A stretch of 64,000 nucleotides of DNA, taken from NCBI GenBank assembly GCA_047495785.1, contig JBLDXI010000054.1:1364001-1428000 (forward strand). The letters are read 5' to 3'. The position numbers and the translations under genes are program-made. The notes under the pieces are model-generated. The model ran no database searches and was not told the origin of the DNA. It worked only from the letters and a program-made list of their open reading frames with translations. This stretch comes from Lepidodermella squamata (Eukaryota; Animalia; Gastrotricha). Positions 1,328 through 57,855 of this stretch are shown one piece after another (the stretch's first letter is position 1; every line of letters begins with the position of its first letter).

Positions 1328-3039
1328 TTATAGAGCCAGCCGTTGGAGGGCTGCCTTGCAAGCAGCAGCTAATGCATCCACGGCCGAGGCTAACACATCA
1401 ACGACAGCTTTTTTATAAAGATTATCAGTGGTCGTGGTCGCGTTCGTAGTCGTCGTGGGTTGGGTCGTAGTCGTGATAAAAGGCGCAATCGTAGTGTCCA
1501 AGTTGATGCCCAGATTTAACTAGAAAACACAAGAATTTCGTATTTAAAGCTGTCAAGCCGCTCAAGCAATGATATTTACATCAGCCGATGCGTCGTAACC
1601 GTTGCAGAGAAGCATTCGCTTGGTAGTATCGAAGCCTGGAGATGTGAGGTACTGACCCTGCGCATTAATGTAAACACCCTGACCCGGCGAGAAGCTTAGA
1701 TTGCCTTCCTGAGAGTTATTGTAGCCAGCAGCCGGACTCCAGTTGGTGAAGCTTGTGTTCGTGAACTGTGTGCCATCGTCCCCTAAAGAGAAATTTTAGT
1801 GAAAAATACAGGGCGAATCAATGGCATTTACATGTCCAGCCATTGACGCCGATGCTGTTGTCATTGGCGTTGTGAAGGCCGATCCAGAATTCGTTGCCAA
1901 GGCCAGCCACTGCCTTGATCGCAGCGTTCAAGTCGTCTCGCGACTGGATGGTCGCCAAACCTCGGCGACAAGCGACTGAAACGCCGGTTTCGGGGGTCGT
2001 AACCACTTGGTACTAGTATATGAATCAAGATTGCCACATCGTAGCTTATGAATCAACAAGCATTCGCAGTACCTTTTGTGCAGTGTTGCACAGATAGGCG
2101 CGCTTCGTCGCTGCTGCAGAGATGAAATACAAGCCCTTCTCATTCATGTAGATGCCCGCGCCGTTAGCGAGGTTCAAGCTGGTATCTCGAGGGTTAGTGT
2201 AGCCGGTCAGTGGGCTCCAGTTGACGAAGCTGGTGCGGGTGAACACAGTGCCATCGCCCCCTTAAAGTTTGTAGCTATAAAAATTTTGCAAATTATTGTT
2301 TTCGGACTCACAAGTCCAGCCGTTAACTCCTTCGCTGCTTTTTCCAATATTGCGCAGGCCAATCCAGTACTCGCCCTTCTTGCCACCGATCGCCTTGATA
2401 GCAGCGTTCAAGTCATCTTGAGACTGGATCGTAGCAAGGCCATTCGGGCAAGCAGCGCCTGCCACGGTGTCAGGAGTCGTGATGACTTTGTACTGAAAAA
2501 TGCTGGTTGCTTAAGCGATATCCTAATTGAAATGTTTTACCTTCAGCTGACCGTTGCACAGCAGTGGGCGAGCGACTGTTGCGAAACCATCTGCGGATGA
2601 GTACTGGCCCTTTTCATTGATGTAGACACCCTGGCCTGAAGCTGATCGCATATTGGTATCCTGAGGGTCTGTGTATCCAGCCGCCGGGTTCCAATTGACG
2701 TAGCTAGTACGGCTGAAAATCGAACCATCGCTCCCTTTGAATTAGACGCAATTAAGCTAGCAAGCTACAGCGAGAATGCCCAAATCACTTACAAGTCCAT
2801 CCATTGACACCGTCCGCGTTGTTGCCGGTGTTGTAGAGGCCGATCCAGTATTGGCCCACTCGGCCTCCCATCGCGCTGACAGCCGCATTCAAGTCGTCCT
2901 TCGATAAGATAGAAGCAACACCGTAGGGGCAGGCGTTTGAAGTGCCAACACTAGGCGTTAGGTTGAGGTAGTATCTTGCGGCTGCGGAATACCCAACGGC
3001 AGCGAACAATGCTGTTGCGACAAAAGTGAAACGAGTCAT
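1328..3039 (-). CDS. Secreted triple C-type-lectin-like protein, copy A (7 exons; signal peptide, 3 CTLDs, Thr stalk, C-terminal peptide)
   Basis: ATG at 3039 (MTRFTFVATALFAAVGYSAAA signal peptide). Three repeats of C-P/R-x-G-L/V-A-S/T-I-x-S-x-D-D-L, (Y/F)WIGL, GWT|W-x-DG, NW-x-P and LC-N. GT-AG introns restore the frame at every junction checked. Tail ...TTTTDNLYKKAVVDVLASAVDALAAACKAALQRLAL*. Confidence 0.85.
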
Positions 3040-3176
3040 TAAAATGAACGGAACGATGAGATGGAGGAATTTGAAACTGATAAAAAGCGGCTTTTTAGCC
3101 CGTAATTTATAGGCACTTATTGTCTCAATTCCACCGGTGCACGAGCTATTTCTAGCGATCAAAATATAAATGAAGT

Positions 3177-3217
3177 GCAGGTGTTTAATGCCTATTTCGA
3201 GAAGCAAAACAAATAAG
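3177..3217 (-). promoter_or_regulatory. Conserved lectin-gene promoter module (Fox-type TRTTTGT site + AAACACCTG E-box), copy A; identical in copy B at 8978-9018
   Basis: Minus strand cttatttgttttgc...ggcattaaacacctgc; a TATA-like cctataaatt lies about 70 bp upstream of the ATG. Confidence 0.55.
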
Positions 3218-3479: not shown

Positions 3480-6400
3480 TGGGAGACGTGTTTGGTTTCT
3501 TGCCTTTTTTGATAGAGCTCTTATTGAAATTGATTACGCACGGCGATGGCGGCAGGTGATAAGAATCGATTTGAACGACGAATATCTCAACGAACTCGCC
3601 AAGCCATACACTGGATTCACGGCGAACAAGGAAATCAGCGGTAACAGATGCGACCTGCTCGACAAACGAATGTGTAAGGTGGAAGCTATGACTGAAAGTG
3701 AGCCATGGTTTGTTGTTTCCACGATCAAGTGCATGCTGAAGAATTTGAAGAAAAAATCATGCAACGCATAATGAAAATTGGCGGCGGTGTCACCGAAGAA
3801 AGGCTGCTCGCAATGTCAGGCGACCTACAGCATGTATAGCTGCCACGGCGGCCAGCGAGTCAGCCCAACGTCAGCGATTTCTCGAAGGGATAATCGCTGA
3901 CCTCCAACGGCAACTGGAGGCGAGTAAGCAGGAAATCGAAAAATACAAGAAAGAGCTGGAGGAATTGAAACCCAAGGTGGAAGACCTGAAGCCCAAGCTT
4001 GAAGAAGTGAAAAGCAACACGTATGCGAACGTTGTCAGCGATCTGAGGAAGAAGACGTCGAAACTGGAGACGAAAGTCGAGAAGACTGGGGCAAAAATGG
4101 AAGCGGATATATATATGCGGGGGCGGTCGTCCTGAATGGCATCAAGGAAGGATCGGGCGGATCTTTGGAGGAGGCGGTAAAGACGGCGATTCCATTGCTG
4201 GACACGGTGTACTTCAGAACCCGCCGGCTAGGAATTCGCCGTGAGGGCATCAGGGCAAGACCAGTGTTGGTCATCCCGGTGAACAGTAATGCCATCCGAG
4301 AGAAACTGGAGGAGATCAAGGATGCGCTACCTAATCGACCATTTGCCCCGGCAAACTTCAGGGAATCCGATGACGCACTTATGAAAGCAGGCAAGCTACT
4401 TCAAAATTCGAGGTTTGCGGTTGCGGGTGGTGAAAGAGAACGATGTTGTAAGGCTTCGTTACGACCCAAGGACGAAGAAAGTCGTCGAAAGTGACGAGCA
4501 AGTGGCCGTCTTTGATGGTTACTTCCGTTCTCCGTGACAGACTGAGGGGAACAACAGGAAAAAACGCGAAGTTTGGAGAGGAGCCTCTCGGAACATTCAC
4601 GGATTCCGGGAGGAGAAACGTGAAGGGCTGGCGGATAGGGTGCGGCAGCATGAATTCTCAGGATGGATGGAAGAGCCATTCTTCCAGGAATTCTCAGTAT
4701 TAGTAACTCGGTGCTTGACTATGCGCTCGTCAACCTGGACAGCTTCGCAAAAGTGGAGGAAATGAAAGTCGTTACTGCGAACGATTGGCTGTCGGATCAC
4801 AGAGAGATTTGTTTAAAAGTGAGAAAAGAAACTGACGTACCGGGCAAACTGAGGATTGACAGCAAGCGATTTCAAAATGAGTTACGTGACTTCGTGCTAA
4901 ATTTGAACGGCGATGAAACGGGACCAGCATTGGCTGAAGGGCTGTGGACGGTCGCGGAACGTTCGCAAAGGACGAGTTCGTGCAAATGGAGGAAGCCGGG
5001 TGCCTGGTGTGAAACAAACGTACCCCGATTGAAGCAGAACAGGCTGGTGTCGCTGACCGACAACGAGAGATTGAAAATTCTTATTGAAAACCCCAACAAA
5101 GTCTGGGAACTGAAGAAGAAAGAAGGTAGGCCCAAAATGCCGACAGTGGGAGCGTCGAGGGCGCATCTAAGCGAGGCGCTCGGATGAGATTTGTCGGTCA
5201 AGGTGATAAAGCCCTCAAAGCCAGTGATATTTGCGACTCTGGTGAAACGAGCGAACACAACGCTGGAGGAGGAACCAGCCAAAGGGATGAAACTCTACAG
5301 TCTGCAAAACTGGACAAACCCGTTTACGCTGCTAGGGGCTCTGACAAAAGTGGCTACGGCTCAGCGACCAAAGGAAGACTTCAGGGCGAGGAAAGAAGTA
5401 CTGCTGAAGGAGGTCGCGATCAACGAGGTGAAGTCAGAGATCATAAAGTGTTCGAAGCTGTCGGCCGCCGGCATTGATGGAGTTGGATACAGGGAGCTAC
5501 AAGCAATTTCGAAACGATGGCACCGTTGTTGAGCAGGATTTATTCTGACACGCTAGCAGGAAAGCCGTACCCGATCAAATGGAAGACAGCCCTACTGACG
5601 CCAATCTACAAGCAGGGTGACCCAAACGAGCCGAAAAATTACAGGGCAGTCTCTTTGCAACCTTGTATAGCTAAAGTCTTCTCCTGGATTATAGATTTGC
5701 GGCTACGAGGATGGTTGAAACTGTACTTGCCACTGAAGAAGAGCCAGTTTGGTTTCCAGGAGGGCGTATCCACAGTCGACGCGGCTATTTTCTTGCAAAC
5801 GATAATCTCTTATTGGCTGGAGAGGGTCTATGCGACATTCGTCGACTTCAAAGCGGCGTTTGATAAAGTCGACCGGGAGCTACTGTTTCGAAAGCTGGAA
5901 AAGCGGGGGTTATCAGTTCGGTTTATCGCCGTTCTGCGGGATATATGTACAGTGAAACGCGAGCGGCGATATCCGTCGGCAAAGAAATTTCTCATCCCTT
6001 CACCACTTGGACGGGTGTGAAGCAGGGCGACCCACTGTCACCCCTGCTGTTTTGCATCTTCATTGACGACCCAGAGGAGGAGCTTAGCGGAGTACCGGAT
6101 CTGCCGCTCGGCGCGGAGGGAGTTCGGATCATCCTATTTGCCGATGATGTCGTCATTCTGTCAGCATGGCATCATGAGATGACGGGGTACCTCATGCGAC
6201 TGGCAAAGTACGAGGCTGACCATAGCACGACGGTTAATGTCGAAAAGACAAAGTACATGATATTCGGCAAAAAAGAAGAGGGCGAGCCGAAACCCCTTCA
6301 GTTCAAGGGCACCCCGCTGGAGGAAGTCCATAAGTTCAGGTAGTACTTGGGATGGTCTGAAAGCAATCTCTCCTTCGGTGAAGCAAGGAAACAAGCGCAT

Positions 6401-7124: not shown

Positions 7125-8840
7125 TTATAGAGCCAGCCGTTGGAGGGCTGCCTTGCAAGCAGCAGCTAATGCATCCACGGCCGAGGCTAACACATCAACG
7201 ACTGCTTTTTTATAAAGATTATCAGTGGTCGTGGTCGCGTTCGTAGTCGTCGTGGGCTGGGTCGTAGTCGTGATAAAAGGCGCAATCGTAGTGTCCAAGT
7301 TGATGCCCAAATTTAACTAGAAAACACAAAAATTTCGAATTTAAAGCTTTCAAGCCGCTCAAGCAATGATATTTACATCAGCCGATGCGTCGTAGCCGTT
7401 GCAGAGAAGCATTCGCTTGGTAGTATCGAAGCCTGGAGATGTGAGGTACTGACCCTGCGCATTAATGTAAACACCCTGACCCGGCGAGAAGCTTAGATTG
7501 CCTTCCTGAGGGTTATTGTTGCCAGCAGCCGGACTCCAGTTGGTGAAGCTTGTGTTCGTGAACTGTGTGCCATCGTCCCCTAAAGAGACATTTCAGTGAA
7601 AATTTAAAGCTAATCAAAGGCATTTACATGTCCAGCCATTGACGCCGATGGTCCTGTCATTTGTGTTGTGAAGGCCGATCCAGAATTCGCTGCCAAGACC
7701 AGTCACAGCCTTGACGGCCGCGCTCACGTCGTCTCGCGATTGGATCGTCGCCAAACCGCGGCGGCAGGCGTTTGAAACGCCAGTGTCAGGGGTCGTGACC
7801 ACTTGGTACTATATTTTAATCGAATCGAGATTTTCACGCATTGTGGCTCGACAACAAGCAATCGCAATACCTTTGGTGCAGCATTGCACAGATAGGCGCG
7901 CTTCGTCGATGCTGCAGAGATGAAGTACAAGCCCTTCTCATTCATGTAGATGCCCGCGCCGTAAGCGATGTTCAAGTTTGTATCTAGCGGGTTAGTGTAG
8001 CCGGTCAGTGGGCTCCAGTTGACGAAGCTACTGACGGTGAACACAGTGCCGTCAGCCCCTGAAAGTTTGTGTTGCTAGTCAAAGTTTGAAAGTCAATATT
8101 TTTTAGACTCACACGTCCATCCGTTAATGCCCTCACTAATTTTGCCATTATTACGCAAGCCAATCCAGTACTCGCCCTTCTTGCCACCGATCGCCTTGAT
8201 AGCAGCGTTCAAGTCATCTCGAGATTGGATCGTAGCAAGGCCATTCGGGCAAGCAGCGCCTGCCACGGTGTCAGGAGTCGTGATGACTTTGTACTGAAAA
8301 ATGCTGGTTGCTTAAGCGATATCCTAATTGAAATGTTTTACCTTCAGCTGACCGTTGCACAGCAGTGGGCGAGCGACTGTTGCGAAACCATCTGCGGATG
8401 AGTACTGGCCCTTTTCATTGATGTAGACACCCTGGCCTGAAGCTGATCGCATATTGGTATCCTGAGGGTCTGTGTACCCAGCCGCCGGGTTCCAATTGAC
8501 GTAGCTAGTACGGCTGAAAATCGAACCATCGCTCCCTTTGAATTAGACGCAATTAAGCTAGCAAGCTACAGCGAGAATGCCCAAATCACTTACAAGTCCA
8601 TCCATTGACACCGTCCGCGTTGTTGCCGGTGTTGTAGAGGCCGATCCAGTATTGGCCCACTCGGCCTCCCATCGCGCTGACAGCCGCATTCAAGTCGTCC
8701 TTCGATAAGATAGAAGCAACACCGTAGGGGCAGGCGTTTGAAGTGCCAACACTAGGCGTTAGGTTGAGGTAGTATCTTGCGGCTGCGGAATACCCAACGG
8801 CAGCGAACAATGCTGTTGCGACAAAAGTGAAACGAGTCAT
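7125..8840 (-). CDS. Secreted triple C-type-lectin-like protein, copy B (tandem duplicate of A)
   Basis: Same 7-exon model. Promoter, exons 1-2 and the last exons are nearly identical to copy A (5' offset 5801 bp); the middle exons and introns diverge. Confidence 0.85.
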
Positions 8841-9903: not shown

Positions 9904-10295
9904 CTAGATTAGATTAGTTGGACCAGGAGACCACCGAACGCTAAGACATACAGCAAATTCCTTCGGCCGGTACTCGGCAACGTTTACACCAACCGTTGCC
10001 TCGTAGCCATTCCAGAGAGGCATGCATGAAGCATGCGTTTGTTATCAGCGAATCCTGAATTCAGCTAGGACGTAATTGCCCTGCGCATTCATGTAAACAC
10101 CCTTGCCCGACGAGAAGAGTAGATTGGCAACCTGAAGGTTCAAGTTCCGTCGCCGGGCTCAAGTCGGTAAAGCTATTACGGGTGAAAATCGAATCGTCAA
10201 TTCCTTTTAATTCGATACAAATTTACTAGCGGTAACGAGATCGCATACCCAACGGCAGCGAGCAAAGCTGTTGCGCAAAAGGCGAAACGAGACAG
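9904..10295 (-). pseudogene. Lectin family remnant, copy C (start codon lost, most domains deleted)
   Basis: Signal-peptide region begins with CTG instead of ATG and joins a single degenerate CTLD half. Stalk-less tail GYEATVGVNVAEYRPKEFAVCLSVRWSPG resembles copy F. Promoter module retained at about 10465-10506. Confidence 0.7.
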
Positions 10296-10689
10296 TAGAA
10301 TGAACCAAACTGTAAGAAGAAGGAATTAACAACGATGAAAGCTGCCTGGTTAGCATATATTTATTTATTTGTTTACAAGCTTTAACCCGAAGCACTCAGT
10401 AGCACTCAGTTTAGAGACACTTTTTGTCTAAATTGCACGAGCGATATTCGAGCGATAATAAAGTGCAGGTGTTTAATGCCTATTTCGAGAAGCAAAACAA
10501 ACAAGCTTCTTCCCACTCATTCGTACGAAAAAAAGAATGAAGGAAATAAAGCAAAATAAAATTCTTGTGTCAACAATTATTATGCGAAAGGTTATTCATA
10601 ATGACGCACCCTTGGTGAAAAATAGACAGTATTTACGGGTTCGATAGATGACAGAAGTTCCCCTTGAGCTCTTGAAATTAGGTCCAATT

Positions 10690-11135
10690 TATCTCGAGAT
10701 ATCAATCAAGGCCGCTTGAACTTCACAAAAAAGCCTTTTGGCGACGATGTTGAAACCATTTTTGTTAGATTTTGGCAACAAAGCAAATCAAGACTCGCCT
10801 CCACGAAGCTTCGCGAAGAAAGCCATTGATACTGCCGGTCGCTTTGCCGATGTTTGCTTTGATACAACAGGTGTCGAACTTCTCCAGCAAGCTTCGAGCT
10901 ATGCACTGAAGCCTAGCGGTGTCCTGATGCTGGTTGGCATGAACTCATTGTCAGTGATAGACATGATTCGCAAGGAGTTTCACATCAGATCGCTACAACT
11001 GCACATACCAGGCAGGCAGCTGTTGACCTTGTGGCTTCCAAAAAGTTGACAGGGCTGGACAAAATGGTCACTCACACCTTTCCCTCTCAGAGCAAACTGT
11101 CGAAGCTTTCGAGACAGCGGCTAACGCCATCGCAG
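10690..11135 (+). pseudogene. Sorbitol dehydrogenase-like (MDR family) C-terminal fragment, frameshifted, intronless
   Basis: Across frames: DINQGRL..., ADVCFDTTGVELLQQASSYALKPSGVLMLVGM, KEFHIR, RYNCTYQA-AVDLVASKKLTGLDKMVTHTFP-EQTVEAFETA. This matches the SDH C-terminal half; the N-terminal catalytic half is absent. Confidence 0.7.
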
Positions 11136-11813: not shown

Positions 11814-12236
11814 ATGTCACTCATTCCATTTCACTTGTCGATCTGCATCAACAGCTTGGAGGAAGCTCGGCGCTTCTACGGCGGAATCCTCGGCATGGAA
11901 GAGCGAAGGGCAACCGACACCTCCGTGCACTTTGACGTTCATGGTTCGCAACTGACATTGCACGCGGTGGACGGCTACAGCGCGTTGAACATCCAGCGAG
12001 AAGTTGACGCTGAAGATGTTCCGGTGCCGCATTTCGGATTCGCTCTGCCCGATGCTGATTCGTTCTTCGAGGTCGCTCAACGTCTGCGAAAGGCTGGCGT
12101 CAAATTTGTCAAGGAGCCGGCGAAGCGATTCTTGGGCAAGAAGCACGAACAGTACGTGCTGTTCGTTCTGGACCCGGCTGGCAATGGCATCGAAATCAAA
12201 GCCTTCATCCACGCTGCGCCTCGTCAATGGCTGTGA
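11814..12236 (+). CDS. VOC (glyoxalase/bleomycin-resistance/extradiol dioxygenase) family protein, bacterial type, intronless
   Basis: 140 aa intact ORF with PFHLS...LEEARRFYGGILG, FDVHGSQL, VDAEDVPVPHFG, RLRKAGVKFVKEP, EQYVLFVLDPAGNGIEIKAF, the motif pattern of the small bacterial VOC family (COG3565-like). Metal-ligand His/His/Glu positions appear present. Confidence 0.88.
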   Translation: MSLIPFHLSICINSLEEARRFYGGILGMEERRATDTSVHFDVHGSQLTLHAVDGYSALNIQREVDAEDVPVPHFGFALPDADSFFEVAQRLRKAGVKFVKEPAKRFLGKKHEQYVLFVLDPAGNGIEIKAFIHAAPRQWL

Positions 12237-32765: not shown

Positions 32766-34439
32766 ATGGCTCGTTTCACTTTTGTGGCAACGGCTCTGCT
32801 CGCTGCCGTCGGTTATGCCGCAGCCGCCAGATACTACGTCAACCAAACGCCTAATACTGGCACTTCAAACGCCTGTCCGTACGGTCTTGCCTCCATCTTG
32901 TCAAAGGACGACATGAATGCGGCTGTCACCGCGATCGGGGGCAAAGCGGGCCAGTACTGGATCGGTCTCTACAACACCGGCAACAACGCGGACGGTGTCA
33001 ATGGATGGACTTGTAAGTGATGTGGGCATTCTTACTTGCAAATTGTAAATTGTAGCAAATTCTAAGGGAGTGATGGTTCGATTTTCAATCGTAATAGCTA
33101 CGTGAATTGGAGCCCGGTGACTGGCTACACGAACCCTCAGAATACCAATCTGCAACCAGCTCCAGGCCAGAGTGTCTACATCGATGAAAAGGGCCAGTTC
33201 GTTACAGCAGCGAGCACTATCACCCGCCCGCTGCTTTGCAACGGCCAGTTGAAGGTCAGACATTCCGCTGTGAATTTCATTAAAACCAAGATTTTCTCGT
33301 CCTTGTAGTACAAAGTCATAGCGACTCCCGACACCGTGGCAGCCGCTGCTTGCCCATACGGCCTTGCTACGATCCAGTCCCGAGACGACTTGAACGCTGC
33401 CATCAAGGCGATCGGTGGCAAGAAGGGCGAGTACTGGATTGGTCTGCGCAATACTGGCAAAAACACTGATGGAGTAAACGGATGGACATGTAAGCTCTGA
33501 AAACGTCAATTTTTTAACTTTGACTAGATTTACAAACTTCCAGGGGCTGACGGCACCGTGTTCACCCGCAGCAGCTTCATCAACTGGGGCCCAGCGTCCG
33601 GCTACGTGAACCCTCAAGATACCAACTTGGGCTCAGCCCCAGGCCAAGGCTTCTTCATCACTGAGAAGGGCTTGTACTTGACTGCCCAGGCAACTATGAA
33701 GCGCGCCTATCTTTGCAACGCTGCGCAAAAGGTATTGCTTTGATGTGAAGCTGTGATGTGTCAAGTCTCAATTATTCATATAAAGTACCAAGTGGTCACG
33801 ACCCCCGACACCGGTGTTTCAAGCCTTTGCCGCCGCGGCTTGGCGACTATTCAATCGCGAGACGACTTGAACGCGGCCGTCAAAGCTGTGGCTGGCCTTG
33901 GCAGCGAGTTCTGGATCGGCCTTCACAACGTCAATGACAACTCGATCGGCGTCAATGGCTGGACCTGTAAGCCTGCATATTCCCGCCCTGAAATTTCACT
34001 AAATTGTATGTTCAGGGGACGATGGCACTCAGTTCACGCGCAGCAGTTTCATCAACTGGAGCCCGGCGACTGGTTACACTAACCCTCAAGATACCAACCT
34101 GGGCTCCGCGCCCGGCCAAGGCTTCTACATCAATTCCCAGGGCCAGTACCTCACAGCCCTAGCTAGTAACAAACGCATGCTTCTCTGTAACGGCTACGAC
34201 AAGTCGGCTGATGTAAAATCATGATTTGGGTATACTTGAAAGCTTTATTCCATTTTTTTCAGTTGAATCTGGGCATCAACTTGGACACTACGATCCCGCC
34301 TTTGACCACGACCACTACCACCACGACCACGCCCCAGGCCATGGACATGCCGGATGACGATTCGCCACCGGAATGTATTAAATATGGGTGGAATTCAATT
34401 GACTGCGTAGGAGCCATCTTTTCTCGTGACTTGGGCTAA
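32766..34439 (+). CDS. Secreted triple C-type-lectin-like protein, copy D (452 aa)
   Basis: Exons 32766-33012, 33067-33254, 33309-33489, 33544-33731, 33786-33966, 34016-34212, 34263-34439 (1359 nt, in frame; introns 54,54,54,54,49,50 nt). Tail PPECIKYGWNSIDCVGAIFSRDLG*. Confidence 0.88.
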
Positions 34440-35270
34440 AGGTTAAATTATCAACTCGATTAATAGATATATTGATTCTGACATTCTGTTTGTGTCAGTT
34501 CTGACGAGGGTTTTATAGAAACCGCCTTAGATAAGTTGTTCACCTTTTCAAAGGCCGATGCTATAGAATGTAGTTACGTATGATGAGTTGCCATGAAACA
34601 AATAAATAAGTGGAAGAGTAAATGCAAACTTACAGTCATATTGCATGGGATAAGAGAAACTGTGTCAAACTGTTAGCCACTGGCTTTACTTATTCTGCCC
34701 AAGTCTTCCGTTTGATGAAACCAAATTAATTTTGATTGCGCTGTTTCCTAAGCCATTTTTATTTCGAATACTTGTGTTGTCAGAATCTTCTGGGAGCAAA
34801 CTTTTACAAATCAGGGCAATCAATTCCAGTTCGCTTCAAGTATTAGGATGTACAAAAGCAATCCGAGAGACTTATACCATCTGATATAGAGCAAATCCCC
34901 AACATTCAAACTTGCAGATTGCAGCCAGAACCCTGTCTCGCTTTGAAGATAATATAGCGAAGAAACGTTTCGCAATTTACGTAATCAATCTGATAGTGCT
35001 GACAGTTTATATACAATGTCTTAGAGCTTTGCAGCGGACAGCGGATAATACTCGCCTGAAAGCCATTTCGGCAGCATTTACCCCTGTTTTCGATTTATCG
35101 CACGGAAACAAAAGTCACGAAAATACTGAGGCGCCGAAACCTCCGCGACTGGTGGCCAAAAAATTCCGCAGAGCGGGAATTCGCTGCGCATCATTTTAAT
35201 GAGGAGTTTTAAGAAATTGAGGAGTTCCACAGGCAAAAGAATGCTTGAAATTTTTCAACTCATTGAAATG

Positions 35271-35504
35271 CTCAATGAAAAGGGCCAGTACGGATTCGCG
35301 GCGGGTTTCGCAACAGTCCCTCGCCCACTGCTGTGCAACGGGTAGCCCACGACGACCACAAGCACGACTACAGCTACGACCTCAACCTATCCTGATCCTT
35401 ATGCAGAATGTGCCCCGGGGAAATTAGCAGCAATGGATCCCAATACCCGCTACATCAGACAGTACTGGTGTAGTTCTGCTGATTTATCGCATAATATTGG
35501 TTAG
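35271..35504 (+). pseudogene. Lectin family remnant: end of CTLD1 fused to Thr stalk and a unique tail
   Basis: NEKGQYGFAAGFATVPRPLLCNG* then PTTTTSTTTATTSTYPDPYAECAPGKLAAMDPNTRYIRQYWCSSADLSHNIG*. Confidence 0.7.
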
Positions 35505-37461: not shown

Positions 37462-39174
37462 ATGGTTCGTTTCACCTATGTCACGACGGCTTTGCTCATT
37501 GCCTTTCGCTATGCCACAGCCGCCAGATACTACGTCAACCAAACGCCTAATACTGGCACTTCAAACGCCTGTCCGTACGGTCTTGCCTCCATCTTGTCAA
37601 AGGACGACATGAATGCGGCTGTCACCGCGATCGGAGGCAAAGCGGGCCAGTACTGGATCGGACTCTACAACACCGGCAACATCGCGGACGGTGTAAATGG
37701 ATGGACTTGTAAGTGATATTGGTATTCGCGTTAACTCCCTAGCGTCTAATTGTGTCTAATTTGTGTCTAATTCAAAGGGAGTGATGGTTCGATTTTCAAT
37801 CGTAATAGCTACGTCAATTGGAACCCGGCGACTGGCTACACGAACCCTCAGGATACCAATCTGCAACCAGGTTCAAACCTACTGGGTATCGTTATCAATG
37901 AAAAGGGCCAGTACGGATTCGCAGAGGGTTTCGCATCTGTCCCTCGTCAGCTGCTTTGCAACGGCCAGCTGAAGGTAAGACAATCCTTTGAGGAATTCGC
38001 TTGAAAGCCCAGCATTTTTTACAGTATAAGGTCGTTGCAAACCCTGACACCATGGCAGCCGCTGCTTGCCCGTACGGCCTTGCTACGATCCAGTCTCGAG
38101 ATGACTTGAACGCTGCGATCAAGGCAATCGGTGGCAAGAAGGGCGAGTACTGGATTGGCCTGCGTAATAATGGCATAAACAGTGAAGGAGTTAACGGCTG
38201 GACTTGTGAGTCCGAAAAGCTTGAACTTTCCACACTTTGACTAGCTATGCAAACTTTCAGGGGCTGACGGCACTGCATTCACCCGCAGCAGCTTCCTCAA
38301 CTGGAGCCCCGCGACCGGCTATACCAACCCGCAAGATACCAACCTGAACCTCGCTAACGGCGCGGGCATCTACATGAATGAGAAGGGCTTGTACTTCTTC
38401 TCTGCAGCAGCGACTAAGCGCGCCTATCTGTGCAACGCAGCGCAAAAGGTATTGCGATTGCTTGTTGTTCCTTAGACCGCGATGTGACAATCTCGATTCA
38501 TGTAGTACCAAGTGGTCAAGACCCCTGACACAGGCGTTTCAAACGCCTGCCGCCGTGGTTTGGCGACGATTCAATCGCGAGACGACCTGAACGCGGCCGT
38601 CAAGGCTGTGGCTGGCCTTGGCAGCGAATTCTGGATTGGCCTTCACAACACCAATGACAAGACCATCGGCGTCAATGGCTGGACATGTAAATGCCTTAAT
38701 TCGCCACTACTGAATTTTCACTGAATTGTCTCTTTAGGGGACGATGGCACGCAGTTCACGAATACCAGCTTCACCAACTGGAGCCCGGTGACTGGATACA
38801 CGAACCCTCAGTCTACGACTCTAGGCTTCGCGAGCGGCCAGGGTGTTTTCATTAACGCCCGGCCCGTTCGTCCTAGCTGAAGGATTCGGCTCTATCAAAC
38901 GCATGCTTCTTTGCAACGGCTACGACGCATCGGCTGATGTAAAATCATTGCTTTTTCGGCTTGAAAGCTTTAAATTCGAAAATCTTATGTTTTCTAGTTG
39001 AGTCTGGGCATTAACTTGGACACTACGATCGCGCCTGCACCCACGACTACGACGCAGCCCCCGAGCACTACCACGACCCCGTTCGATGATAATCCATATA
39101 AAGAATGTGCCGTGAACCCAAAATCTGCTGCTTGCAAAGACGCCCTCATTCGACAAGGTGTAACATTCAGCTAG
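37462..39174 (+). pseudogene. Triple-CTLD copy E, frameshifted in CTLD3
   Basis: Full 7-exon layout, but aac gcc c-- ggc (2-bp loss relative to paralogs, near 38860) gives TGA at 38878-38880. The downstream exon would encode ...DDNPYKECAVNPKSAACKDALIRQGVTFS*. The promoter E-box is also damaged (ggcacctac). Confidence 0.75.
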
Positions 39175-40844: not shown

Positions 40845-42409
40845 ATGACAAGCTTCGCCTTCGCAGTAACAGCTTTCTTCGCTGCCGTCGGCTTTGCCGC
40901 AGCCGCCAGATACTACGTCAACCCAAAGCCTAACGTTGGCACTTCCAACGCTTGCCCGTACGGTGTCGCCTCCATCTTGTCGAAGGATGACTTGAATGCG
41001 GCAATCAGCGCGATCGGATGCAAAGTGGGCCTGTACTGGATCGGCCTCTACAACACCGGCAACAACTCTGTTGGCGTCAATGGATGGACTTGTAAGTGAT
41101 ATGGGCATTCTCGCTAACTCTCTAGCTGATTTGGGTCTAATTCAAAGGGATTGATGGTTCGATTTTCAACCGTAATAGCTTCGTCAATTGGAACCCGGCG
41201 ACTGGCTACACGAACCCTCAGGATACCAATCTAAACCCAGGTTCAGGCCTTCCGGGTATCTACATCAATGAAAAGGGCCAGTACGGATTTGCAGAGGGTT
41301 TCGCAAAAGTCCCTCGCCCATTGCTGTGCAACGAGCAGCTAAAGGTTAGACATTTCACTGAGAATTTCGCCTTAACAGCCAGAAATTTAGTATTACCCAC
41401 TTACTACAAACATTCCGGGAGCCTCTCCCTGCCAATATTGGAATGCTACGATCCAGTCTCGAGATGACTTGAACGCTGCTATTAAGGCGATCGGTGGCAG
41501 GAAGGGCGAGTACTGGATTGGCCTGCGTAATACTGGTAACAAAGCTGATGGACTAAATGGCTGGACGTGTGAGTCCTAAAACATTCATTTTCAAACTTCG
41601 ACTATCCGTGATAACTTTCAGGGGCTGACGGCACTGCATTCACCCGCAGCAGCTTTGTCAACTGGAGCCCAACGACTGGCTACACCAACCCGCAAGATAC
41701 CAACTTGAAGCTAACTGCCGGCGCGGGCGTCTACATCAACGAGAAGGGCTTGTACTTTATTGATTCGGAAACGATATGGCGCGGCCGTTTGTGCAACATG
41801 GATAAAAAGGTGTATTATTCGCTTGTTGTTTTATAAGCCACGACAATCTCGGTTCATACAGTACCAAGTGGTCACGACCCCTGACACCGGCGTTTCAGGC
41901 GTTTGCCGCCGCGGTTTGGCGACGATCCAGTCTCGAGACGACCTGAACGCGGCCGTCAAGGCTGTGGCTGGCCTTGGCAGCGAATTCTGGATTGGCCTTC
42001 ACAACACCAATGACAAGACCATCGGCGTCAATGGCTGGACATGTAAATGCCTTAATTCGCCTCTAATTTCGACTGAAATGTCTCTTTAGGGGACGAAAGC
42101 ACGCAGTTCACGACTACAAGCTTCACCAACTGGAGCCCGGTGACTGGCTACACGAACCCTCAGGATACCAATCTAAACTTCGAGCGCGGCCAGGGTGTTT
42201 ACATGAATGCGCAGGGCCAGTTCGTCCTAGCTGAAGGATTTGCTACTAGCAAACGCATGCTTCTTTGCAACGGCTACTCCACATGGGCTGAGGTAAAAGT
42301 GGCCGATGACTGGCCGAATGAATATGTAGCATGTCTCAACAAGGGGTATCCCCCTTCTTACTGCTTGCAATACGTCTATACTATTCATTTTTATGGTTTA
42401 AAAGTATAA
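40845..42409 (+). CDS. Triple-CTLD copy F, stalk-less variant (6 exons)
   Basis: Signal MTSFAFAVTAFFAAVGFAAAA; divergent CTLD2 ends (YYPLTTNIPGASPCQYWNATIQSR; DSETIWRGRLCNMDKK). The last CTLD reads straight into VKVADDWPNEYVACLNKGYPPSYCLQYVYTIHFYGLKV* with no final intron or Thr stalk. Confidence 0.8.
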
Positions 42410-46850: not shown

Positions 46851-48578
46851 ATGGCTCGTATCACTTTTGTAGCAACGGCTCTGCTCGCTGCCGTAGGCTA
46901 TGCCGCAGCCGCCAGATACTACGTCAACCAAACGCCTAATACTGGCACTTCAAACGCCTGTCCGTACGGTCTTGCCTCCATCTTGTCAAAGGACGACATG
47001 AATGCGGCTGTCACCGCGATTGGTGGTCAAGTGGGCCAGTACTGGATCGGTCTCTACAACACCGGCAACAACGCGGATGGTGTCAATGGATGGACTTGTA
47101 AGTGTTATGGGCATTTTCGTTACCTGGCTATTGTGTATTTCCAATTCAAAGGGATTGATGGCTCGATTTTCACCCGTAACGGTAGCTACGTCAATTGGAG
47201 CCCGGTAACTGGCTACGTTAACCCTCAGGATACCAATCTAGGCACAGCGCCAGGCCAGGGTGTCTACATCAATGAAAAGGGCCAGTTCGTTACAGCAGTG
47301 AGCACTATCACCCGCCCGCTGCTTTGCAACGGTCAGCTGAAGGTATACAACCCTTTTAGAATTCCGCGTCTAAAACCAGGATTTCATACAGTACAAAGTC
47401 ATCGCAACCCCTGACACTGTGGCAGCCGCTGCTTGCCCGTACGGCCTTGCAACGATCCAGTCCCGTGATGACTTGAACGCTGCTATCAAGGCGATCGGTG
47501 GCAAGAAGGGCGAATACTGGATTGGCCTGCGTAATACTGGCAAAAATAGTGATGGAGTTAACGGATGGACATGTAAGTCTAAAAGCCTCAATCTACTTTG
47601 TTGGCTAAGCACAAGATTTCAGGGGCTGACGGCACCGTGTTCACCCGCAGCAGCTTCATCAACTGGAGCCCAGCAACCGGCTACGTGAATCCTCAAGATA
47701 CCAACTTGGGCTCAGCCCCAGGCCAAGGCTTCTACATCACTGAGAAGGGCTTGTACTTGACTGCCCAGGCAACTATGAAGCGCGCCTATCTGTGCAACGC
47801 TGCGCAAAAGGTATGTTTCTGATGTGAAGCTGTGATGTGTCAAGTCTCAACTTATTCATATAAAGTACCAAGTGGTAACGACCCGTGACACCGGTGTTTC
47901 AAGCCTTTGTCGCCGCGGCTTGGCGACGATTCAATCGCGAGACGACTTGAACGCGGCCGTCAAGGCTGTGGCTGGCCTTGGCAGCGAGTTCTGGATCGGC
48001 CTACACAACGTCAATGACAACTCGATCGGCGTCAATGGCTGGACCTGTAAGCCTGCATATTCCCGCCCTGAAATTTCACTAAATTGTATGTTCAGGGGAC
48101 GATGGCACTCAGTTCACGCGCAGCAGCTTCATCAACTGGAGCCCAGCGACTGGTTACACTAACCCTCAGGATACTAACCTGGGCTCAGCCCCAGGCCAAG
48201 GCTTCTACATCAATTCCCAGGGCCAGTACCTCACAGCCCTGGCTAGTAACAAACGCATGCTTCTCTGTAACGGCTACGACAAGTCGGCTGATGTAAAATC
48301 ATGATTTGGGTATACTTGAAAGCTTTATTCCATTTCTTTTTTTCCAGTTGAGTCTGGGCATTAACTTGGACACTACGATCCCGCCTGTGACCACGACTAC
48401 GACACAGCCCACGACCACGACCACGACCACGACTACGACTACGACTGCGACCACGACCACGACCACGACTGAAGATCCGAGCCAAGTGACTCCATGGTAC
48501 AGTAATTTGCCAGAATGTCAGAATGGATGGGAAAATGGTGAATGCTTTCATGCCATGTTTTCTCAATTATTTGGCTAA
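46851..48578 (+). CDS. Triple-CTLD copy G
   Basis: Same 7-exon model, longest Thr stalk; tail EDPSQVTPWYSNLPECQNGWENGECFHAMFSQLFG*. Confidence 0.87.
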
Positions 48579-51335: not shown

Positions 51336-51695
51336 ATGCCGCGAGCGTACAAAAAGACATCAAATATTGACAGGGAAAGGTTGGTAACTGCCTTCGAAAA
51401 TGGCGAAGATTTTCATGCGGCTGCAAAGGTTCTCGGAATTTCTAACAGAACCATGTATAATATCATCAACACATATCGCACCAATGCTCGCATTGAAGCT
51501 GAGCATCGAGGAGGTGCTCCCCGCCGTTGGGAAGCTCAGTTTACTGAACATTTAGTTGGGGCAATCGAAGAAAACTCCCAGCTGACGTTGGAGGATCTCA
51601 GGATGAGACTGCTGCAAAATTTTCATGCAGAATTTTCGATCACGACGATCCACAGAAAATTGGATGGCGCCCTAATTACGATGAAACTTTCCTAA
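51336..51695 (+). pseudogene. Transposase N-terminus (paired HTH), DDE domain deleted
   Basis: DRERLV..FENG...AAKVLGISNRTMYNII...RGG-APRR...IEENSQLTLEDLR...SITTIHRKL, the typical Tc1/IS630 HTH-linker-HTH. Stops before the catalytic domain. Confidence 0.85.
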
Positions 51696-51800
51696 TCCTT
51701 CGACCATCTGCTCCGAAGGTTTATCACCCAGTGAATTGCAGTACCAGATGACCCATTCCAGAAGGCTTATTTCTTCTTCATCAAATTAAACGCTTCAAAT

Positions 51801-54034: not shown

Positions 54035-56138
54035 ATTTGGGTAATTTCGGGTTTCAGGGTGGCTAATAATGGACATTTACCCCATGCCAAACTTTGAGAG
54101 GAGGTTGGTCACGCCTGGATGTGGTTCAAATTTGGAACATTTGCGATCAAAATTGATCAATCCATATAATTTTAAAGTTCGGCAGAAATATTTTTGAAAT
54201 ATATGTACGAGTAGCAAAAATCGTGTACAATATATGTACGAGCAGCGGATAAGCCCAAAAAGCAGTGCACACGCCACGCAACATAATAAATCGAAGTAAT
54301 CACGATAAAATTCTGCGTAATTTTCTGCATATTGGCTCATCGTAACTTTAAGATTATGGCTTATGAATTTTGGAAAATTTTCGGAAAACGACTTTTTTGC
54401 CCAAATTGAGTTCTGAGCTACATTACGGAGTTTTTATGACTTGTGCTCCTCAATTTTTGGTGTGAAAAGCTAGAATAGCTGACCATCATGTTAGTCGATT
54501 GGGTGAAAATCAGAGGCCGAGCCCGAGCGCCTGCTGGGAGGACTGTTTAGCGCGTTTATCCTGCTTTGAAGCCATCTGATTTGTTGGGGACCCCTTCCAA
54601 CAGCGCGCTAATGCGGGCCATGGATTATAGAGGTCCCTACATGCGCATGGTAAAATGTTGCCATATTCCTCAACGGTGTTGAGGACAGAAATGAGATTTT
54701 GAAAAGTATTGTTTTTCAGCCTTAACACCCAAAAAGTGTCTCCAGATTATGCGCATGTATGGGTAGGATTTCCTTACTCTACAGTAAACGCGGATGGAGC
54801 GGCATAATTATCTCTGCCAGCGCTCTTGGTAGTTTAGCCGTCCTACTTTGCACGCTGAAATAAATAGGGCACAAAAAAGAGCATACACTGGTTTCGGTTG
54901 TTTCCTTCATTCCTTCTCCCGTAAGGATGAGCCAGCTCTAATAACAGTGGGATCGCTTCGGCTTGTTTGTTTTACGTTAGTATATTCTACACTAAACATC
55001 TACCAATGAAGCTAGTCTTATTAATAAAGCCCCTTATATTTTATTATCTCAATATTTATCACGTATTTGTAGAATCCAGGACAATAAGTACCTCAATTTG
55101 CGGGTAGCTTATCTGCTAAATGCTTGTTCGAAAACGAAAAACGAAAAGCTTTTTATTTTGTCCTTTGTTCCAGATAAAACGAACGAAAATGTACAATTTG
55201 GAAGGCAAGAAAAAAGGCGCAGGCACTATCGATTTCATAGTCTTCCCGGTTAAACCAGCAACTTTTCTGATGAAGATGGAAATGTCAAGGGCGAAGTTTT
55301 GGCTTTTGTAACCGAAGCACAAGATAGACTTTTTTATACTTGAGAATTGCAGAACTGACGTGAAGCTCGTCAGAAATCCTCGCGACTGACAAGTATGTAA
55401 AAATATAACAGCACTCGAGCGGTTGACAACATTCAGTGAAATGAGTTGACGATCCTTATAACAAGTGAAAATCTGTTGCTGACATCTGACATCGCGGAAA
55501 ATCTAAAGCCAATAAAACGATAGTACAGTGAGGCTCAGGTTCATGGGGTTGCTGATACAGTTAGCTTCAACCTGTTTTCAAATAAGAAACGCGAGCTAAA
55601 ATTTGTCCTTCACGTCACATCGCTAGTCATTTTCGCCGCCTTCTTTCTCAGGTGAGGGAGTTCGCTTCGATATATAATCAACCTGAAGCAGTAAAAATGC
55701 TAGCTTTCTCTGAATTTTAAAATAGATAAAAGCAGTCAATAAATTTGAGCTCTGGGTTGAGGAACAGTATGTCTTATAGGATTCCCTCTTGCCCAATTGA
55801 AAATTCCGAGAAAAGTTCCGCTTTTCGTTTCTTAATAGGCTACCTCATTGTTTAAAACGGGACGTCGTCTTTTATTTCATATTGTACGGGATCGTTAAAT
55901 TTGTTGATTTAGCAATTTTATTTCCTTCATTCTATCTCACGTGAGGATGGGTAAAGGATAGTGACTTGTTTGTTTTGCTCATTGATTAAGTCATAAAACA
56001 CCTGCCTGTTATTATTATCGCTCAAAATAGATCACGCATGGGCAGAATTAGGACAGAAAATGCCTATAAATTATGACATAATGATGCAGCTTTTCATCAG
56101 TTTTCGAATTTGTATCTCTCATCGCTTGGTTCATTTCA

Positions 56139-57855
56139 ATGGCTCGTATCACTTTTGTGGCAACGGCTTTGCTCGCTGCCGTAGGCTATGCCGCAGCCGC
56201 CAGATACTACGTCAATCAAACGCCTAATACTGGCACTTCAAACGCCTGTCCGTACGGTCTTGCCTCCATCTTGTCAAAGGACGACATGAATGCGGCTGTA
56301 ACCGCGATTGGTGGTCAAGTGGGCCAGTACTGGATCGGTCTCTACAACACCGGCAACAACGCGGATGGTGTCAATGGATGGACTTGTAAGTGTTATGGGC
56401 ATTTTCGTTACCTGGCTATTGTGTATTTCCAATTCAAAGGGAGTGATGGTTCGATTTTCACCCGTAATGGTAGCTACGTGAATTGGAGCCCGGTGACTGG
56501 CTACACGAACCCTCAGAATACCAATCTGCAACCAGCTCCAGGCCAGAGTGTCTACATCAATGAAAAGGGCCAGTTCGTTACAGCAGCGAGCACTATCACC
56601 CGCCCGCTGCTTTGCAACGGTCAGCTGAAGGTATAACAACCCTTTTAGAATTCCGCGTCTAAAACCAGGATTTCATACAGTACAAAGTCATCGCAACCCC
56701 TGACACTGTGGCAGCCGCTGCTTGCCCGTACGGCCTTGCAACGATCCAGTCCCGTGATGACTTGAACGCTGCTATCAAGGCGATCGGTGGCAAGAAGGGC
56801 GAATACTGGATTGGCCTGCGTAATACTGGCAAAAATAGTGATGGAGTTAACGGATGGACATGTAAGTCTAAAAGCCTCAATCTACTTTGTTGGCTAAGCA
56901 CAAGATTTCAGGGGCTGACGGCACCGTGTTCACCCGCAGCAGCTTCATCAACTGGAGCCCAGCAACCGGCTACGTGAATCCTCAAGATACCAACTTGGGC
57001 TCAGCCCCAGGCCAAGGCTTCTTCATCACTGAGAAGGGCTTGTACTTGACTGCCCAGGCAACTATGAAGCGCGCCTATCTGTGCAACGCTGCGCAAAAGG
57101 TATTGCTTTGATGTGAAGCTGTGATGTGTCAAGTCTCAATTACTCATCATATATAGTACCAAGTGGTCACGACCCCTGACACCGGCGTTTCAGGCGTTTG
57201 CCGCCGCGGTTTGGCGACGATCCAGTCTCGAGACGACCTGAACGCGGCCGTCAAGGCTGTGGCTGGCCTTGGCAGCGAGTTCTGGATCGGCCTTCACAAC
57301 GTCAATGACAACTCGATCGGCGTCAATGGCTGGACCTGTAAGCCTGCATATTGCATATACCCAACGCAAAATATCTCTTAATTGTATGTTCAGGGGACGA
57401 TGGCACTCAGTTCACGCGCAGCAGCTTCATCAACTGGAGCCCGGCGACTGGTTACACTAACCCTCAGGATACTAACCTGGGCTCAGCCCCAGGCCAAGGC
57501 TTCTACATCAATTCCCAGGGCCAGTACCTCACAGCCCTAGCTAGTAACAAACGCATGCTTCTCTGTAACGGCTACGACAAGTCGGCTGATGTAAAATCAT
57601 GATTTGGGTATACTTGAAAGCTTTATTCCATTTCTATGTTTCCAGTTGAATCTGGGCATTAACTTGGACACTACGATCCCGCCTTTGACCACGACGACGA
57701 CCCAACCCACGACCACGACTACGACTGCGACCACGACCACGACCACAGAAGAGAACCTGAATCCATTTTACAATAATCCGCCGCCAGACTGTCTTCAGTA
57801 TGGATGGGATTCGTATGAATGCTTTCATGCCATGTTTAATGTGGCATTTGGCTAA
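56139..57855 (+). CDS. Triple-CTLD copy H
   Basis: Same 7-exon model; tail EENLNPFYNNPPPDCLQYGWDSYECFHAMFNVAFG*. Confidence 0.87.

What the first reader, a model, noticed from the sequence alone, without database searches (positions are those of the whole stretch)
1328..57855. Conserved triple-lectin carrier with a hypervariable Cys-looped C-terminal peptide: candidate undescribed polymorphic effector family
Seen: nine related loci. The roughly 390-aa three-CTLD body is highly conserved, and some exons are base-identical between copies. The last 25-35 aa differ sharply: A/B LYKKAVVDVLASAVDALAAACKAALQRLAL; D ECIKYGWNSIDCVGAIFSRDLG; E ECAVNPKSAACKDALIRQGVTFS; F ACLNKGYPPSYCLQYVYTIHFYGLKV; G ECQNGWENGECFHAMFSQLFG; H DCLQYGWDSYECFHAMFNVAFG; remnant ECAPGK...YWCSSADLSHNIG. 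Five of these keep a C-x8/9-C loop followed by a helix-like segment, and four end in Gly. Known: a C-terminal Gly is the substrate for PAM amidation, and single-disulfide amidated peptides are common among hormones, venom peptides and antimicrobials. Thr-rich stalks are typically O-glycosylated spacers. Inference: a constant binding module presents or delivers an interchangeable payload, a logic similar to polymorphic toxins. The tail could instead be an oligomerisation or anchoring module.
Basis: partly seen in the sequence, partly recalled or inferred. Interest (0 to 1): 0.85.

Follow-up and report, generated by a model that had tools for sequence, protein, structure and literature searches.

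The report
Tandem triple-lectin genes with fast-evolving tails
The window holds an array of seven copies (plus two fragments) of a secreted protein with three C-type-lectin-like domains, a threonine-rich stalk and a short two-cysteine tail; the tail really does evolve much faster than the body, but nothing shows it to be a swappable toxin-like payload.

Summary
There are nine related loci: seven full seven-exon genes (A, B, D, E, F, G, H) and two fragments. All have conserved GT/AG introns of about 50 nt. Each gene encodes a signal peptide, three two-exon domains (about 395 aa), a Thr-rich stalk and a tail of 32-38 aa.

The body is conserved (omega 0.06-0.41) and is a gene-conversion mosaic; some exons and introns are base-identical between copies. 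The tail diverges as fast as flanking non-coding DNA, or faster. Between G and H the tail is 70% identical and the flanks are 95-96% identical.

The N-terminal half of each domain is homologous to true C-type lectin domains (hhalign 95%, E 1.8e-8). The C-terminal half is too divergent to prove. A low-confidence fold model matches only C-type lectin structures.

The payload reading is not supported:
- All tails align with one another. One Cys is invariant in 8 of 8 tails and the other is present in 6 of 8.
- The tails are 32-38 aa, acidic or neutral, and hit no known domain.
- There is no upstream cleavage site, no orphan cassette, and the C-terminal Gly occurs in one subclade only.
- GPI or transmembrane anchoring is unlikely.

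No relative of the family was found in any protein collection searched. I read it as a lineage-specific secreted multi-lectin family with a weakly constrained, disulfide-stapled C-terminal cap.

The parts
1328..3039 (-). Copy A, intact 7-exon gene (about 461 aa). Exons: 3039-2793, 2734-2541, 2492-2312, 2260-2073, 2012-1832, 1782-1580, 1519-1328. Tail 1331-1426 has a single Cys.
7125..8840 (-). Copy B, intact 7-exon gene. Its 5' part (upstream region to intron 2) and its 3' part (exons 6-7) are 98-100% identical to A; its middle is 73-92% identical. Tail 7128-7223.
10060..10576 (-). Degenerate fragment: upstream region, start of exon 1 and a piece of a C-half exon, with several frame breaks.
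32766..34439 (+). Copy D, intact 7-exon gene (about 452 aa). Tail 34332-34436: C-x9-C loop, ends in Gly.
35217..35504 (+). Fragment C: end of a C-half exon, one in-frame stop, then a Thr-rich stalk and a tail (35388-35501) with a longer Cys-Cys spacing, ending in Gly.
37462..39174 (+). Copy E, 7-exon gene with one frameshift in exon 6 (a pseudogene or a sequencing error). Tail 39076-39171: C-x8-C loop.
40845..42409 (+). Copy F, the most divergent copy. It has no Thr stalk and no intron 6. Exon 6 reads in frame into a tail (42305-42406) with a C-x9-C loop.
46851..48578 (+). Copy G, intact reference model (471 aa). Exons: 46851-47097, 47152-47342, 47392-47572, 47623-47810, 47866-48046, 48096-48292, 48348-48578.
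46851..46913 (+). Signal-peptide-like N-terminus of G: 21 aa with a hydrophobic core and an Ala-rich end. All seven copies have one.
   Evidence: hydropathy of residues 3-20 is 0.8-1.9; otherwise inference
46914..47342 (+). G domain 1 (C-type-lectin-like). It is two exons split by a phase-1 intron (47098-47151) inside a Trp codon. Domain 2 is 47392-47810 and domain 3 is 47866-48292, with the same layout.
48387..48470 (+). G Thr-rich stalk, an ACN codon repeat. Its length varies between copies and it is absent in F.
48471..48575 (+). G tail (35 aa): acidic linker, C-x8-C loop, then 10 residues ending in Gly.
56139..57855 (+). Copy H, intact 7-exon gene (about 464 aa). Tail 57748-57852: C-x9-C loop, ends in Gly.

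Best explanation
This is a lineage-specific tandem array of genes for secreted glycoproteins. Each protein has a signal peptide, three tandem C-type-lectin-like domains with one disulfide each, a conserved short junction, a Thr-rich (probably O-glycosylated) stalk, and a C-terminal cap of about 30 aa. The cap is a two-cysteine loop followed by about 10 residues, probably helical.

The three domains are the working part. They most likely bind an extracellular ligand, glycan or otherwise, multivalently, as secreted multi-lectin proteins of invertebrate immunity or surface coats do.

The array evolves by duplication, decay (E, F and two fragments) and frequent gene conversion. Conversion, together with purifying selection, keeps the body uniform.

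The tail is one homologous segment in all copies. It is only weakly constrained: reading frame, Cys pair and length after the second Cys. It is largely left out of the homogenised tracts. It therefore drifts or diversifies at about the neutral rate or faster. I read it as a small disulfide-stapled end-piece, possibly for pairing or attachment, and not as a delivered payload.

Shown: gene models, homology of the N-half to C-type lectin domains, the conversion mosaic, the rate contrast, and homology of the tails to each other. Inferred: secretion, glycosylation, ligand binding, and the role of the tail.
For: - Gene models with conserved splice sites in 7 copies.
- N-half exons vs a Lectin_C-positive protein: hhalign 92.5%, E 4.9e-7 (its Pfam status). 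Vs an alignment of teleost C-type lectins: 95.4%, E 1.8e-8.
- PDB profile search: top four hits are CD69, E 0.019-0.11.
- Foldseek: top 50 hits are all C-type lectin structures, best E 0.01, TM 0.48-0.52.
- Body omega 0.06-0.41.
- Mosaic identity and runs of shared variable sites: p <= 0.0005 in 9 of 21 pairs. Base-identical introns.
- Tails align, with an invariant Cys.
- D vs G/H tail identity is 49-57%, about the same as downstream DNA at 49-64%.
- Tails are acidic or neutral, without release sites and without a hydrophobic anchor.
- Low-confidence helix predicted after the second Cys.
Against: - Pfam Lectin_C never reaches its cut-off on the exon pieces (best 13 bits against 22.6).
- The C-half exons match nothing.
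- The domain model is poor (pLDDT 50).
- In the G/H pair the tail (70% identity) is much more diverged than both flanks (95-96%). Simple escape from conversion plus drift does not explain this well, and it leaves room for diversifying selection. The G/H tail omega is 1.5 on 25 differences, which cannot be told apart from 1.
- There are no expression data, and the organism is unknown.
Confidence: 0.55

Rival explanations
1. The tail is the functional, diversifying element: a hypervariable peptide on a fixed Cys framework, displayed on or released from the lectin carrier, possibly amidated at the terminal Gly, with a different target for each copy.
For: - The G/H tail is 70% identical inside flanks of 95-96% identity (Fisher 9e-11).
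- G/H tail omega is 1.5 against 0.18 for the body.
- The Cys pair is kept while the residues between the cysteines change.
- D, G, H and fragment C end in Gly.
- Changes fall on both the G and the H branches.
Against: - All tails are alignable homologues, not swapped cassettes.
- D, G and H have no dibasic or other release site.
- D, G and H have net charge -5 and the rest are about neutral, unlike membrane-active peptides.
- No Pfam or PDB relative.
- Synonymous divergence is raised as well (dS 0.23 against 0.085 in the body for G/H; saturated for D/G), which points to older, unhomogenised sequence more than to selection.
- The Gly ends are confined to one subclade.
- Only eight tails are available.
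Confidence: 0.12
2. The tail is a specific pairing or anchoring module. The loop and helix would mediate covalent or non-covalent oligomerisation, or attachment of the stalked lectin to a surface matrix, and the variation would track different partners.
For: - The second Cys is invariant in 8/8 tails.
- The length after the second Cys is conserved (9-14 residues, usually 10).
- A/B keep a single tail Cys, giving an odd Cys count that would suit an intermolecular disulfide.
- A helix is predicted after the second Cys.
- The stalk-plus-end-piece layout resembles stalked lectins (established knowledge).
Against: - No hydrophobic segment long enough for a GPI signal or membrane span (mean hydropathy of the last 15 residues is -0.7 to 1.2).
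- No coiled-coil-length helix.
- Sequence conservation outside the Cys is very low for a specific interface.
- The tail structure model is of low confidence (pLDDT 63, pTM 0.26).
Confidence: 0.2
3. The array is largely non-functional or mis-modelled. It would be decaying duplicates whose similarity reflects recent duplication only, with tails that are simply untranslated or unconstrained sequence.
For: - E has a frameshift, F has lost the stalk, and two loci are fragments.
- No homologue or transcript evidence could be obtained.
Against: - Five copies have fully open seven-exon frames with intact splice sites.
- Exons are 89-96% identical where the neighbouring introns are about 60% identical (D/G, introns 1-3).
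- Body omega is 0.06-0.41.
- The tail frames stay open and end at equivalent positions in all copies.
Confidence: 0.05

Closest known systems
C-type lectin-like domain proteins (Pfam PF00059). The nearest detectable relatives are teleost multi-domain 'mannose receptor-like / ladderlectin-like' proteins.
   Same: The N-terminal half of each domain aligns to the start of the C-type lectin domain through the WIGL strand (37-41% identity; hhalign 92-95%). A Trp-x-Asp-Gly motif follows, formed across the splice junction. The first and last cysteines of the fold are kept. The domains are tandemly repeated in a secreted protein.
   Different: - The second (inner) disulfide is absent.
- The usual calcium/sugar-binding motifs are not recognisable.
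- The C-terminal half has no detectable sequence similarity.
- Pfam's cut-off is not reached on exon pieces.
- No family member is present among 1.84 billion cluster representatives.
Secreted C-type lectins and Thr-rich mucins of nematodes (Toxocara canis TES-32/TES-70 lectins; TES-120 mucins with flanking six-cysteine domains; PMC3611597)
   Same: Secreted lectins; secreted Thr-rich, heavily O-glycosylated proteins that end in small Cys-containing modules; multigene families. The intron size in the window (about 50 nt) is nematode-like (inference only).
   Different: In Toxocara the lectin and the mucin are separate proteins, and the Cys modules are six-cysteine (ShKT) domains of about 36 aa. 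Here three lectin-like domains, a stalk and a two-Cys tail sit in one chain. No sequence relationship was found.
Polymorphic toxin systems, and venom-peptide precursors with a conserved pre-pro region and a hypervariable Cys-framework end
   Same: A conserved N-terminal part with a rapidly diverging C-terminal end, and cysteines kept amid variable residues.
   Different: Here the ends are homologous, only about 30 aa long, and acidic. They have no cleavage site, no toxin domain and no spare cassettes or partner genes. The 'carrier' is a 395-aa lectin body under its own purifying selection.
Tandem immune-type gene arrays homogenised by gene conversion (general phenomenon)
   Same: Mosaic identity blocks that run through introns, birth-and-death of copies, and a segment that stays diverse.
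   Different: The diverse segment here is not the ligand-binding domain but a short C-terminal tail.

Membership tests
C-type lectin-like domain (Pfam PF00059 / CTLD fold) | Score at or above the Lectin_C gathering cut-off (22.6 bits) | tested here: inconclusive
   Only unspliced ORFs and single exons could be sent by reference. The best result was 13 bits, E 0.17, colinear over positions 19-53, on the N-half exons. The spliced domain was not searched; the joined step was left out.
C-type lectin-like domain (Pfam PF00059 / CTLD fold) | Homology of the N-terminal half (first strand, two helices, WIGL strand) | tested here: met
   hhalign 92.5%, E 4.9e-7 vs P0002, which is Lectin_C at E 6e-23. 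hhalign 95.4%, E 1.8e-8 vs nine teleost lectins. phmmer E 1e-6 in 1.84e9 proteins. PDB top hits are CD69.
C-type lectin-like domain (Pfam PF00059 / CTLD fold) | Homology of the C-terminal half (long-loop region and last three strands) | tested here: not met
   No PDB or profile match. Only short motifs (Trp-x-Asp-Gly, Asn-Trp, final Cys) are in the expected order.
C-type lectin-like domain (Pfam PF00059 / CTLD fold) | Outer disulfide (first and last Cys) and inner disulfide | tested here: inconclusive
   There are exactly two Cys per domain, at the positions expected for the outer pair. The inner pair is absent, as in some divergent members.
C-type lectin-like domain (Pfam PF00059 / CTLD fold) | Overall fold | tested here: inconclusive
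   AlphaFold model of domain 1 read through its intron: pLDDT 50, pTM 0.50. The Foldseek top 50 are all C-type lectin structures, best E 0.01, TM 0.48-0.52.
Calcium-dependent sugar-binding C-type lectins | EPN/QPD and WND calcium- and sugar-binding motifs | tested here: not met
   These motifs do not appear as such in any of 20 C-half exons. Sugar binding is therefore not implied.
Polymorphic toxin-type systems | Unrelated C-terminal domains exchanged on a constant N-terminal part | tested here: not met
   All eight tails align, with one invariant Cys and one Cys in 6/8. Similarity follows copy relatedness.
Polymorphic toxin-type systems | Recognisable toxin domain, demarcating or cleavage motif, spare cassettes or partner genes nearby | tested here: not met
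   Tails of 32-38 aa have no Pfam or PDB hit. D, G and H have no dibasic site. No extra tail-like ORFs lie outside the loci.
Amidated peptide precursors | C-terminal Gly plus an upstream processing site that releases the peptide | tested here: not met
   The Gly end is present in D, G, H and fragment C only. None of these has a dibasic site; Lys-Lys occurs only in A/B, which do not end in Gly. Amidation itself is not testable with these tools.
GPI-anchored or membrane-anchored proteins | C-terminal hydrophobic stretch of about 15-20 residues | tested here: not met
   Mean Kyte-Doolittle value of the last 15 residues is -0.7 to 1.2. The best 12-residue window is 1.9, in A/B only, and it contains charged residues. 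This is a rule of thumb, not a trained predictor.
Mucin-type stalk | Thr/Pro-rich low-complexity segment in a secreted protein | tested here: met
   Thr runs of about 10-28 residues in A, B, D, E, G, H and fragment C; an ACN repeat of period 6. Glycosylation is inferred.

The most novel reading that the evidence does not exclude
The tail is under diversifying selection. It would be a short peptide on a fixed two-Cys framework, varied from copy to copy, presented at the tip of a glycosylated stalk by (or processed from) a triple-lectin carrier. That would be a carrier-plus-variable-peptide design not described for C-type lectins.
Probability: 0.1. Interest if true: 0.75.

Novelty: new variant of a known kind. 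Interest (0 to 1): 0.35.

Why it matters
Multi-lectin secreted proteins in tandem, conversion-prone arrays are a common theme of invertebrate recognition and surface biology, so the body is ordinary.

Two things are of some interest. First, the family has no detectable member in very large public protein collections, so it marks an unsampled lineage or a fast-evolving orphan branch of the C-type lectin fold. Second, a 100-nt island of high divergence sits inside nearly identical flanks in one pair of copies. If a larger sample showed this to be selection, it would be a compact example of localised diversification on a Cys framework outside the usual binding domain.

Tried and rejected
- Pfam on unspliced ORFs and single exons: no significant Lectin_C hit.
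- PDB sequence search with the read-through ORF, and with a mixed alignment that kept the intron columns: noise only.
- Word-indexed homologue search with the domain-1 ORF: nothing.
- Full HMMER scan of 1.84e9 representatives: three weak hits, of which only P0002 is meaningful. P0001 and P0003 are repeat proteins of other kinds.
- Metagenome scan with the N-half profile: one locus, a bacterial lytic transglycosylase that shares a short motif by chance.
- Identifying the organism all failed: a neighbouring ion-channel exon, Rfam and tRNA scans and exact look-ups of three window ORFs. The window is not taken for human; intron size and gene content suggest a small-intron invertebrate, perhaps a nematode, by inference only.
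- GPI or transmembrane anchor: rejected on hydropathy.
- Cationic antimicrobial-type tail: rejected on charge.
- Recent conversion of H's loop from D: rejected, since the patch is only about 70% identical (read).
- Literature searches for this architecture found nothing specific.

Full report
**Scope and limits.**
I do not take the window for human. It has about 50-nt introns and dense genes, and its gene content is an ion-channel exon, a GATA finger, CAP-like ORFs and Gly/Tyr-rich secreted ORFs.

The joined step (searching or folding a spliced domain or the whole protein) was left out.

The three- and four-letter motif names used below are named as established knowledge only.

**What is there.**
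A self-comparison finds seven full copies and two fragments.
- Full copies: A 1328-3039(-), B 7125-8840(-), D 32766-34439(+), E 37462-39174(+), F 40845-42409(+), G 46851-48578(+), H 56139-57855(+).
- Fragments: 10060-10576(-) and 35217-35504(+).

Projecting the G model onto the others gives the same seven exons, with GT donors and AG acceptors in every copy and introns of 49-70 nt.
- Exon 1 opens with a 21-aa signal-peptide-like segment.
- Exons 1-2, 3-4 and 5-6 each encode one domain of about 125 aa. A phase-1 intron splits each domain inside a Trp codon, so the Trp-x-Asp-Gly motif exists only after splicing.
- Exon 7 encodes a conserved 13-aa junction, a Thr-rich stalk (an ACN repeat) and the tail.
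- The intact proteins are 452-471 aa; F is 436 aa.

State of the copies:
- E has one frameshift in exon 6.
- F lacks intron 6 and the stalk, and its exon 6 runs in frame into the tail. The in-frame reading recovers a loop alignable with the other tails, but whether F is functional is open.
- The 35-kb fragment is the end of a C-half exon, one in-frame stop, a stalk and a tail.
- The 10-kb fragment is heavily degraded.

I left all broken copies as they stand.

**Is the body a triple C-type lectin?**
Sequence evidence is good for half of each domain.
- The only meaningful hit in 1.84 billion representatives is P0002 (E 1e-6). Pfam calls P0002 Lectin_C at E 6e-23, and its relatives are teleost 'mannose receptor-like', 'ladderlectin-like' and similar lectins.
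- A profile of the 20 N-half exons (A1) matches P0002 at hhalign 92.5%, E 4.9e-7. It matches an alignment of nine teleost lectins (A7) at 95.4%, E 1.8e-8. The match runs from the first strand to the WIGL strand.
- In the PDB the same profile's four best hits are CD69, E 0.019-0.11.

The C-half exons (A2) match nothing. They keep only Asp-Gly, Asn-Trp and the final Cys, in the expected order.

Each domain has exactly two Cys, which fits the outer disulfide of the fold. The inner pair and the usual calcium/sugar motifs are missing.

Pfam's own cut-off is not reached on the pieces that could be sent.

An AlphaFold model of G domain 1 was poor (pLDDT 50, pTM 0.50). It had to be read through its in-frame intron, with half-domain rows as the alignment (A3). 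Even so, its helix-strand order fits, and all 50 best Foldseek matches are C-type lectin structures (LOX-1, CD23, mannose receptor, NKR-P1B, snake-venom lectins; best E 0.01, TM 0.48-0.52).

I conclude that the fold is C-type-lectin-like and divergent, and that lectin activity is not implied.

Domain 3 of any copy is 85-98% identical to domain 3 of the others, but only 48-62% identical to domains 1 and 2. The triplication therefore predates the gene duplications.

**How the array evolves.**
Identity between copies is a mosaic that ignores exon-intron borders.
- A/B are 100% identical from 300 nt upstream to intron 2, 73-92% in the middle, and 98-99% in exons 6-7.
- G/H are identical in introns 1 and 3 and in exon 3.
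- D/G are identical in intron 5.
- B's exon 5 is closer to E (94%) than to A (86%).

Base-identical segments are listed.

I ran a permutation test on the longest runs of shared variable sites. It is significant (p <= 0.0005) in 9 of 21 pairs, with runs of 109 sites (A/B) and 180 sites (G/H) out of 530. The test ignores rate differences between exons and introns, so the smaller runs are less secure.

Selection acts as well. Where D and G have not been homogenised (introns 1-3 at 59-65% identity), the adjoining exons are 89-96% identical. Body omega is 0.06-0.41.

**The tail.**
All eight tails align.
- The second Cys is invariant.
- The first Cys is present in all but A/B. A and B are one lineage, and they carry an insertion there.
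- 9-14 residues (usually 10) follow the second Cys.
- An Ala and a following hydrophobic residue recur after the second Cys.

Two subtypes are visible: D/G/H (with F more distant) and A/B/E. These match the relationships of the bodies. So the tails are one homologous segment that diverged in place.

The tail's rate is high.

| Pair | Tail nt identity | Flanking non-coding DNA |
|---|---|---|
| D vs G/H | 49-57% | 49-64% (downstream) |
| G vs H | 70% | 96% (intron 6), 95% (downstream) |
| A vs B | 99% | tail lies inside a conversion or duplication tract |

- For G vs H, Fisher p = 9e-11. Changes fall on both branches.
- Tail omega is noisy (0.4-3). For G/H it is 1.5, from about 22 non-synonymous and 3 synonymous differences. 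That is not distinguishable from 1, but it is well above the body's 0.18.
- Synonymous divergence is also raised in the tail.

Taken together, this fits a weakly constrained segment left out of the homogenised tracts. The G/H island inside near-identical flanks is not fully explained. Either diversifying selection or a patch copied from a paralogue outside the window would account for it.

**What the tail is not.**
- It matches no Pfam family or solved structure.
- D, G and H have no dibasic site. Lys-Lys occurs only in A/B.
- Net charge is -5 in D, G and H, and between -1 and +1 in the rest.
- No hydrophobic stretch is long enough for a GPI signal or a membrane span.
- No extra tail-like ORFs lie between the genes.
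- The Gly end occurs only in the D/G/H/fragment-C subclade.

A low-confidence model (pLDDT 63, pTM 0.26) gives an extended stalk and a helix from the second Cys to the end.

**Verdict.**
The triple C-type-lectin-like body is reasonably supported. The 'interchangeable payload / polymorphic effector' reading is not supported.

The family has no detectable member in the collections searched, so it is undescribed at the sequence level. Its kind is familiar, however: a secreted multi-lectin with a mucin stalk in a conversion-prone tandem array. The unusual feature is the fast-evolving two-Cys tail.

Noticed in passing
window 4035-6343 (+): Remains of a non-LTR retrotransposon between copies A and B. 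Reverse-transcriptase matches (Pfam RVT_1, E 1.6e-10 and 5.7e-15) are spread over overlapping ORFs in several frames, so the copy carries several frame breaks and looks dead.
   Followed up: partly
window 11814-12236 (+) and 10738-11049 (+): An intronless 140-aa glyoxalase/bleomycin-resistance-type ORF (Pfam E 1.8e-15) lies next to a zinc-dehydrogenase-like fragment. The product is not on record by exact look-up. An intronless enzyme gene among spliced genes could be a horizontal acquisition.
   Followed up: partly
window 13534-14791 (-) and 16896-17340 (-): Two related ORFs for secreted-looking Gly/Tyr-rich proteins with a shared 30-nt repeat. The larger one also has three copies of a roughly 45-aa acidic repeat. 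No Pfam match.
   Followed up: no
window 18327-18599 and 21426-21824 (-): Two near-identical ORF segments about 3 kb apart flank a RING-finger ORF (19633-20403) and a J-domain-like ORF (20273-20851). This is a local duplication or a repeat element.
   Followed up: no
window 22714-23541 (-): Exon encoding a neurotransmitter-gated ion-channel ligand-binding domain (Pfam E 4.6e-13). It is divergent enough that the word-indexed homologue search found nothing at E <= 1e-5.
   Followed up: partly
window 58936-59502 (-) and 30527-30928 (-): Two related ORFs. The first has a weak CAP / cysteine-rich secretory protein match (E 0.0018, below cut-off). So there are further secreted-protein genes beside the lectin array.
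   Followed up: partly
window 58227-58291 (-): A 65-nt inverted copy (94% identical) of the segment just upstream of G's start codon (46780-46844), lying right after copy H. It is a stray piece of the family's 5' flank.
   Followed up: no
window 57840-57885 (+): Copy H has a short duplication of the last codons plus the stop region, so a second copy of the Gly-stop end follows the real stop. This small indel has reshaped the end of the tail.
   Followed up: partly
window 51336-51695 (+): ORF with homeodomain-like HTH matches typical of transposase N-termini (HTH_32 / HTH_23, E about 5e-6). Probably a DNA-transposon remnant between G and H.
   Followed up: no
window 59654-60277 (-) and 61529-63872 (-): A very acidic Asp/Glu-rich ORF with repeats, and a GATA zinc-finger gene (Pfam E 2.8e-14) with Gln/Ala-rich upstream ORFs.
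   Followed up: no
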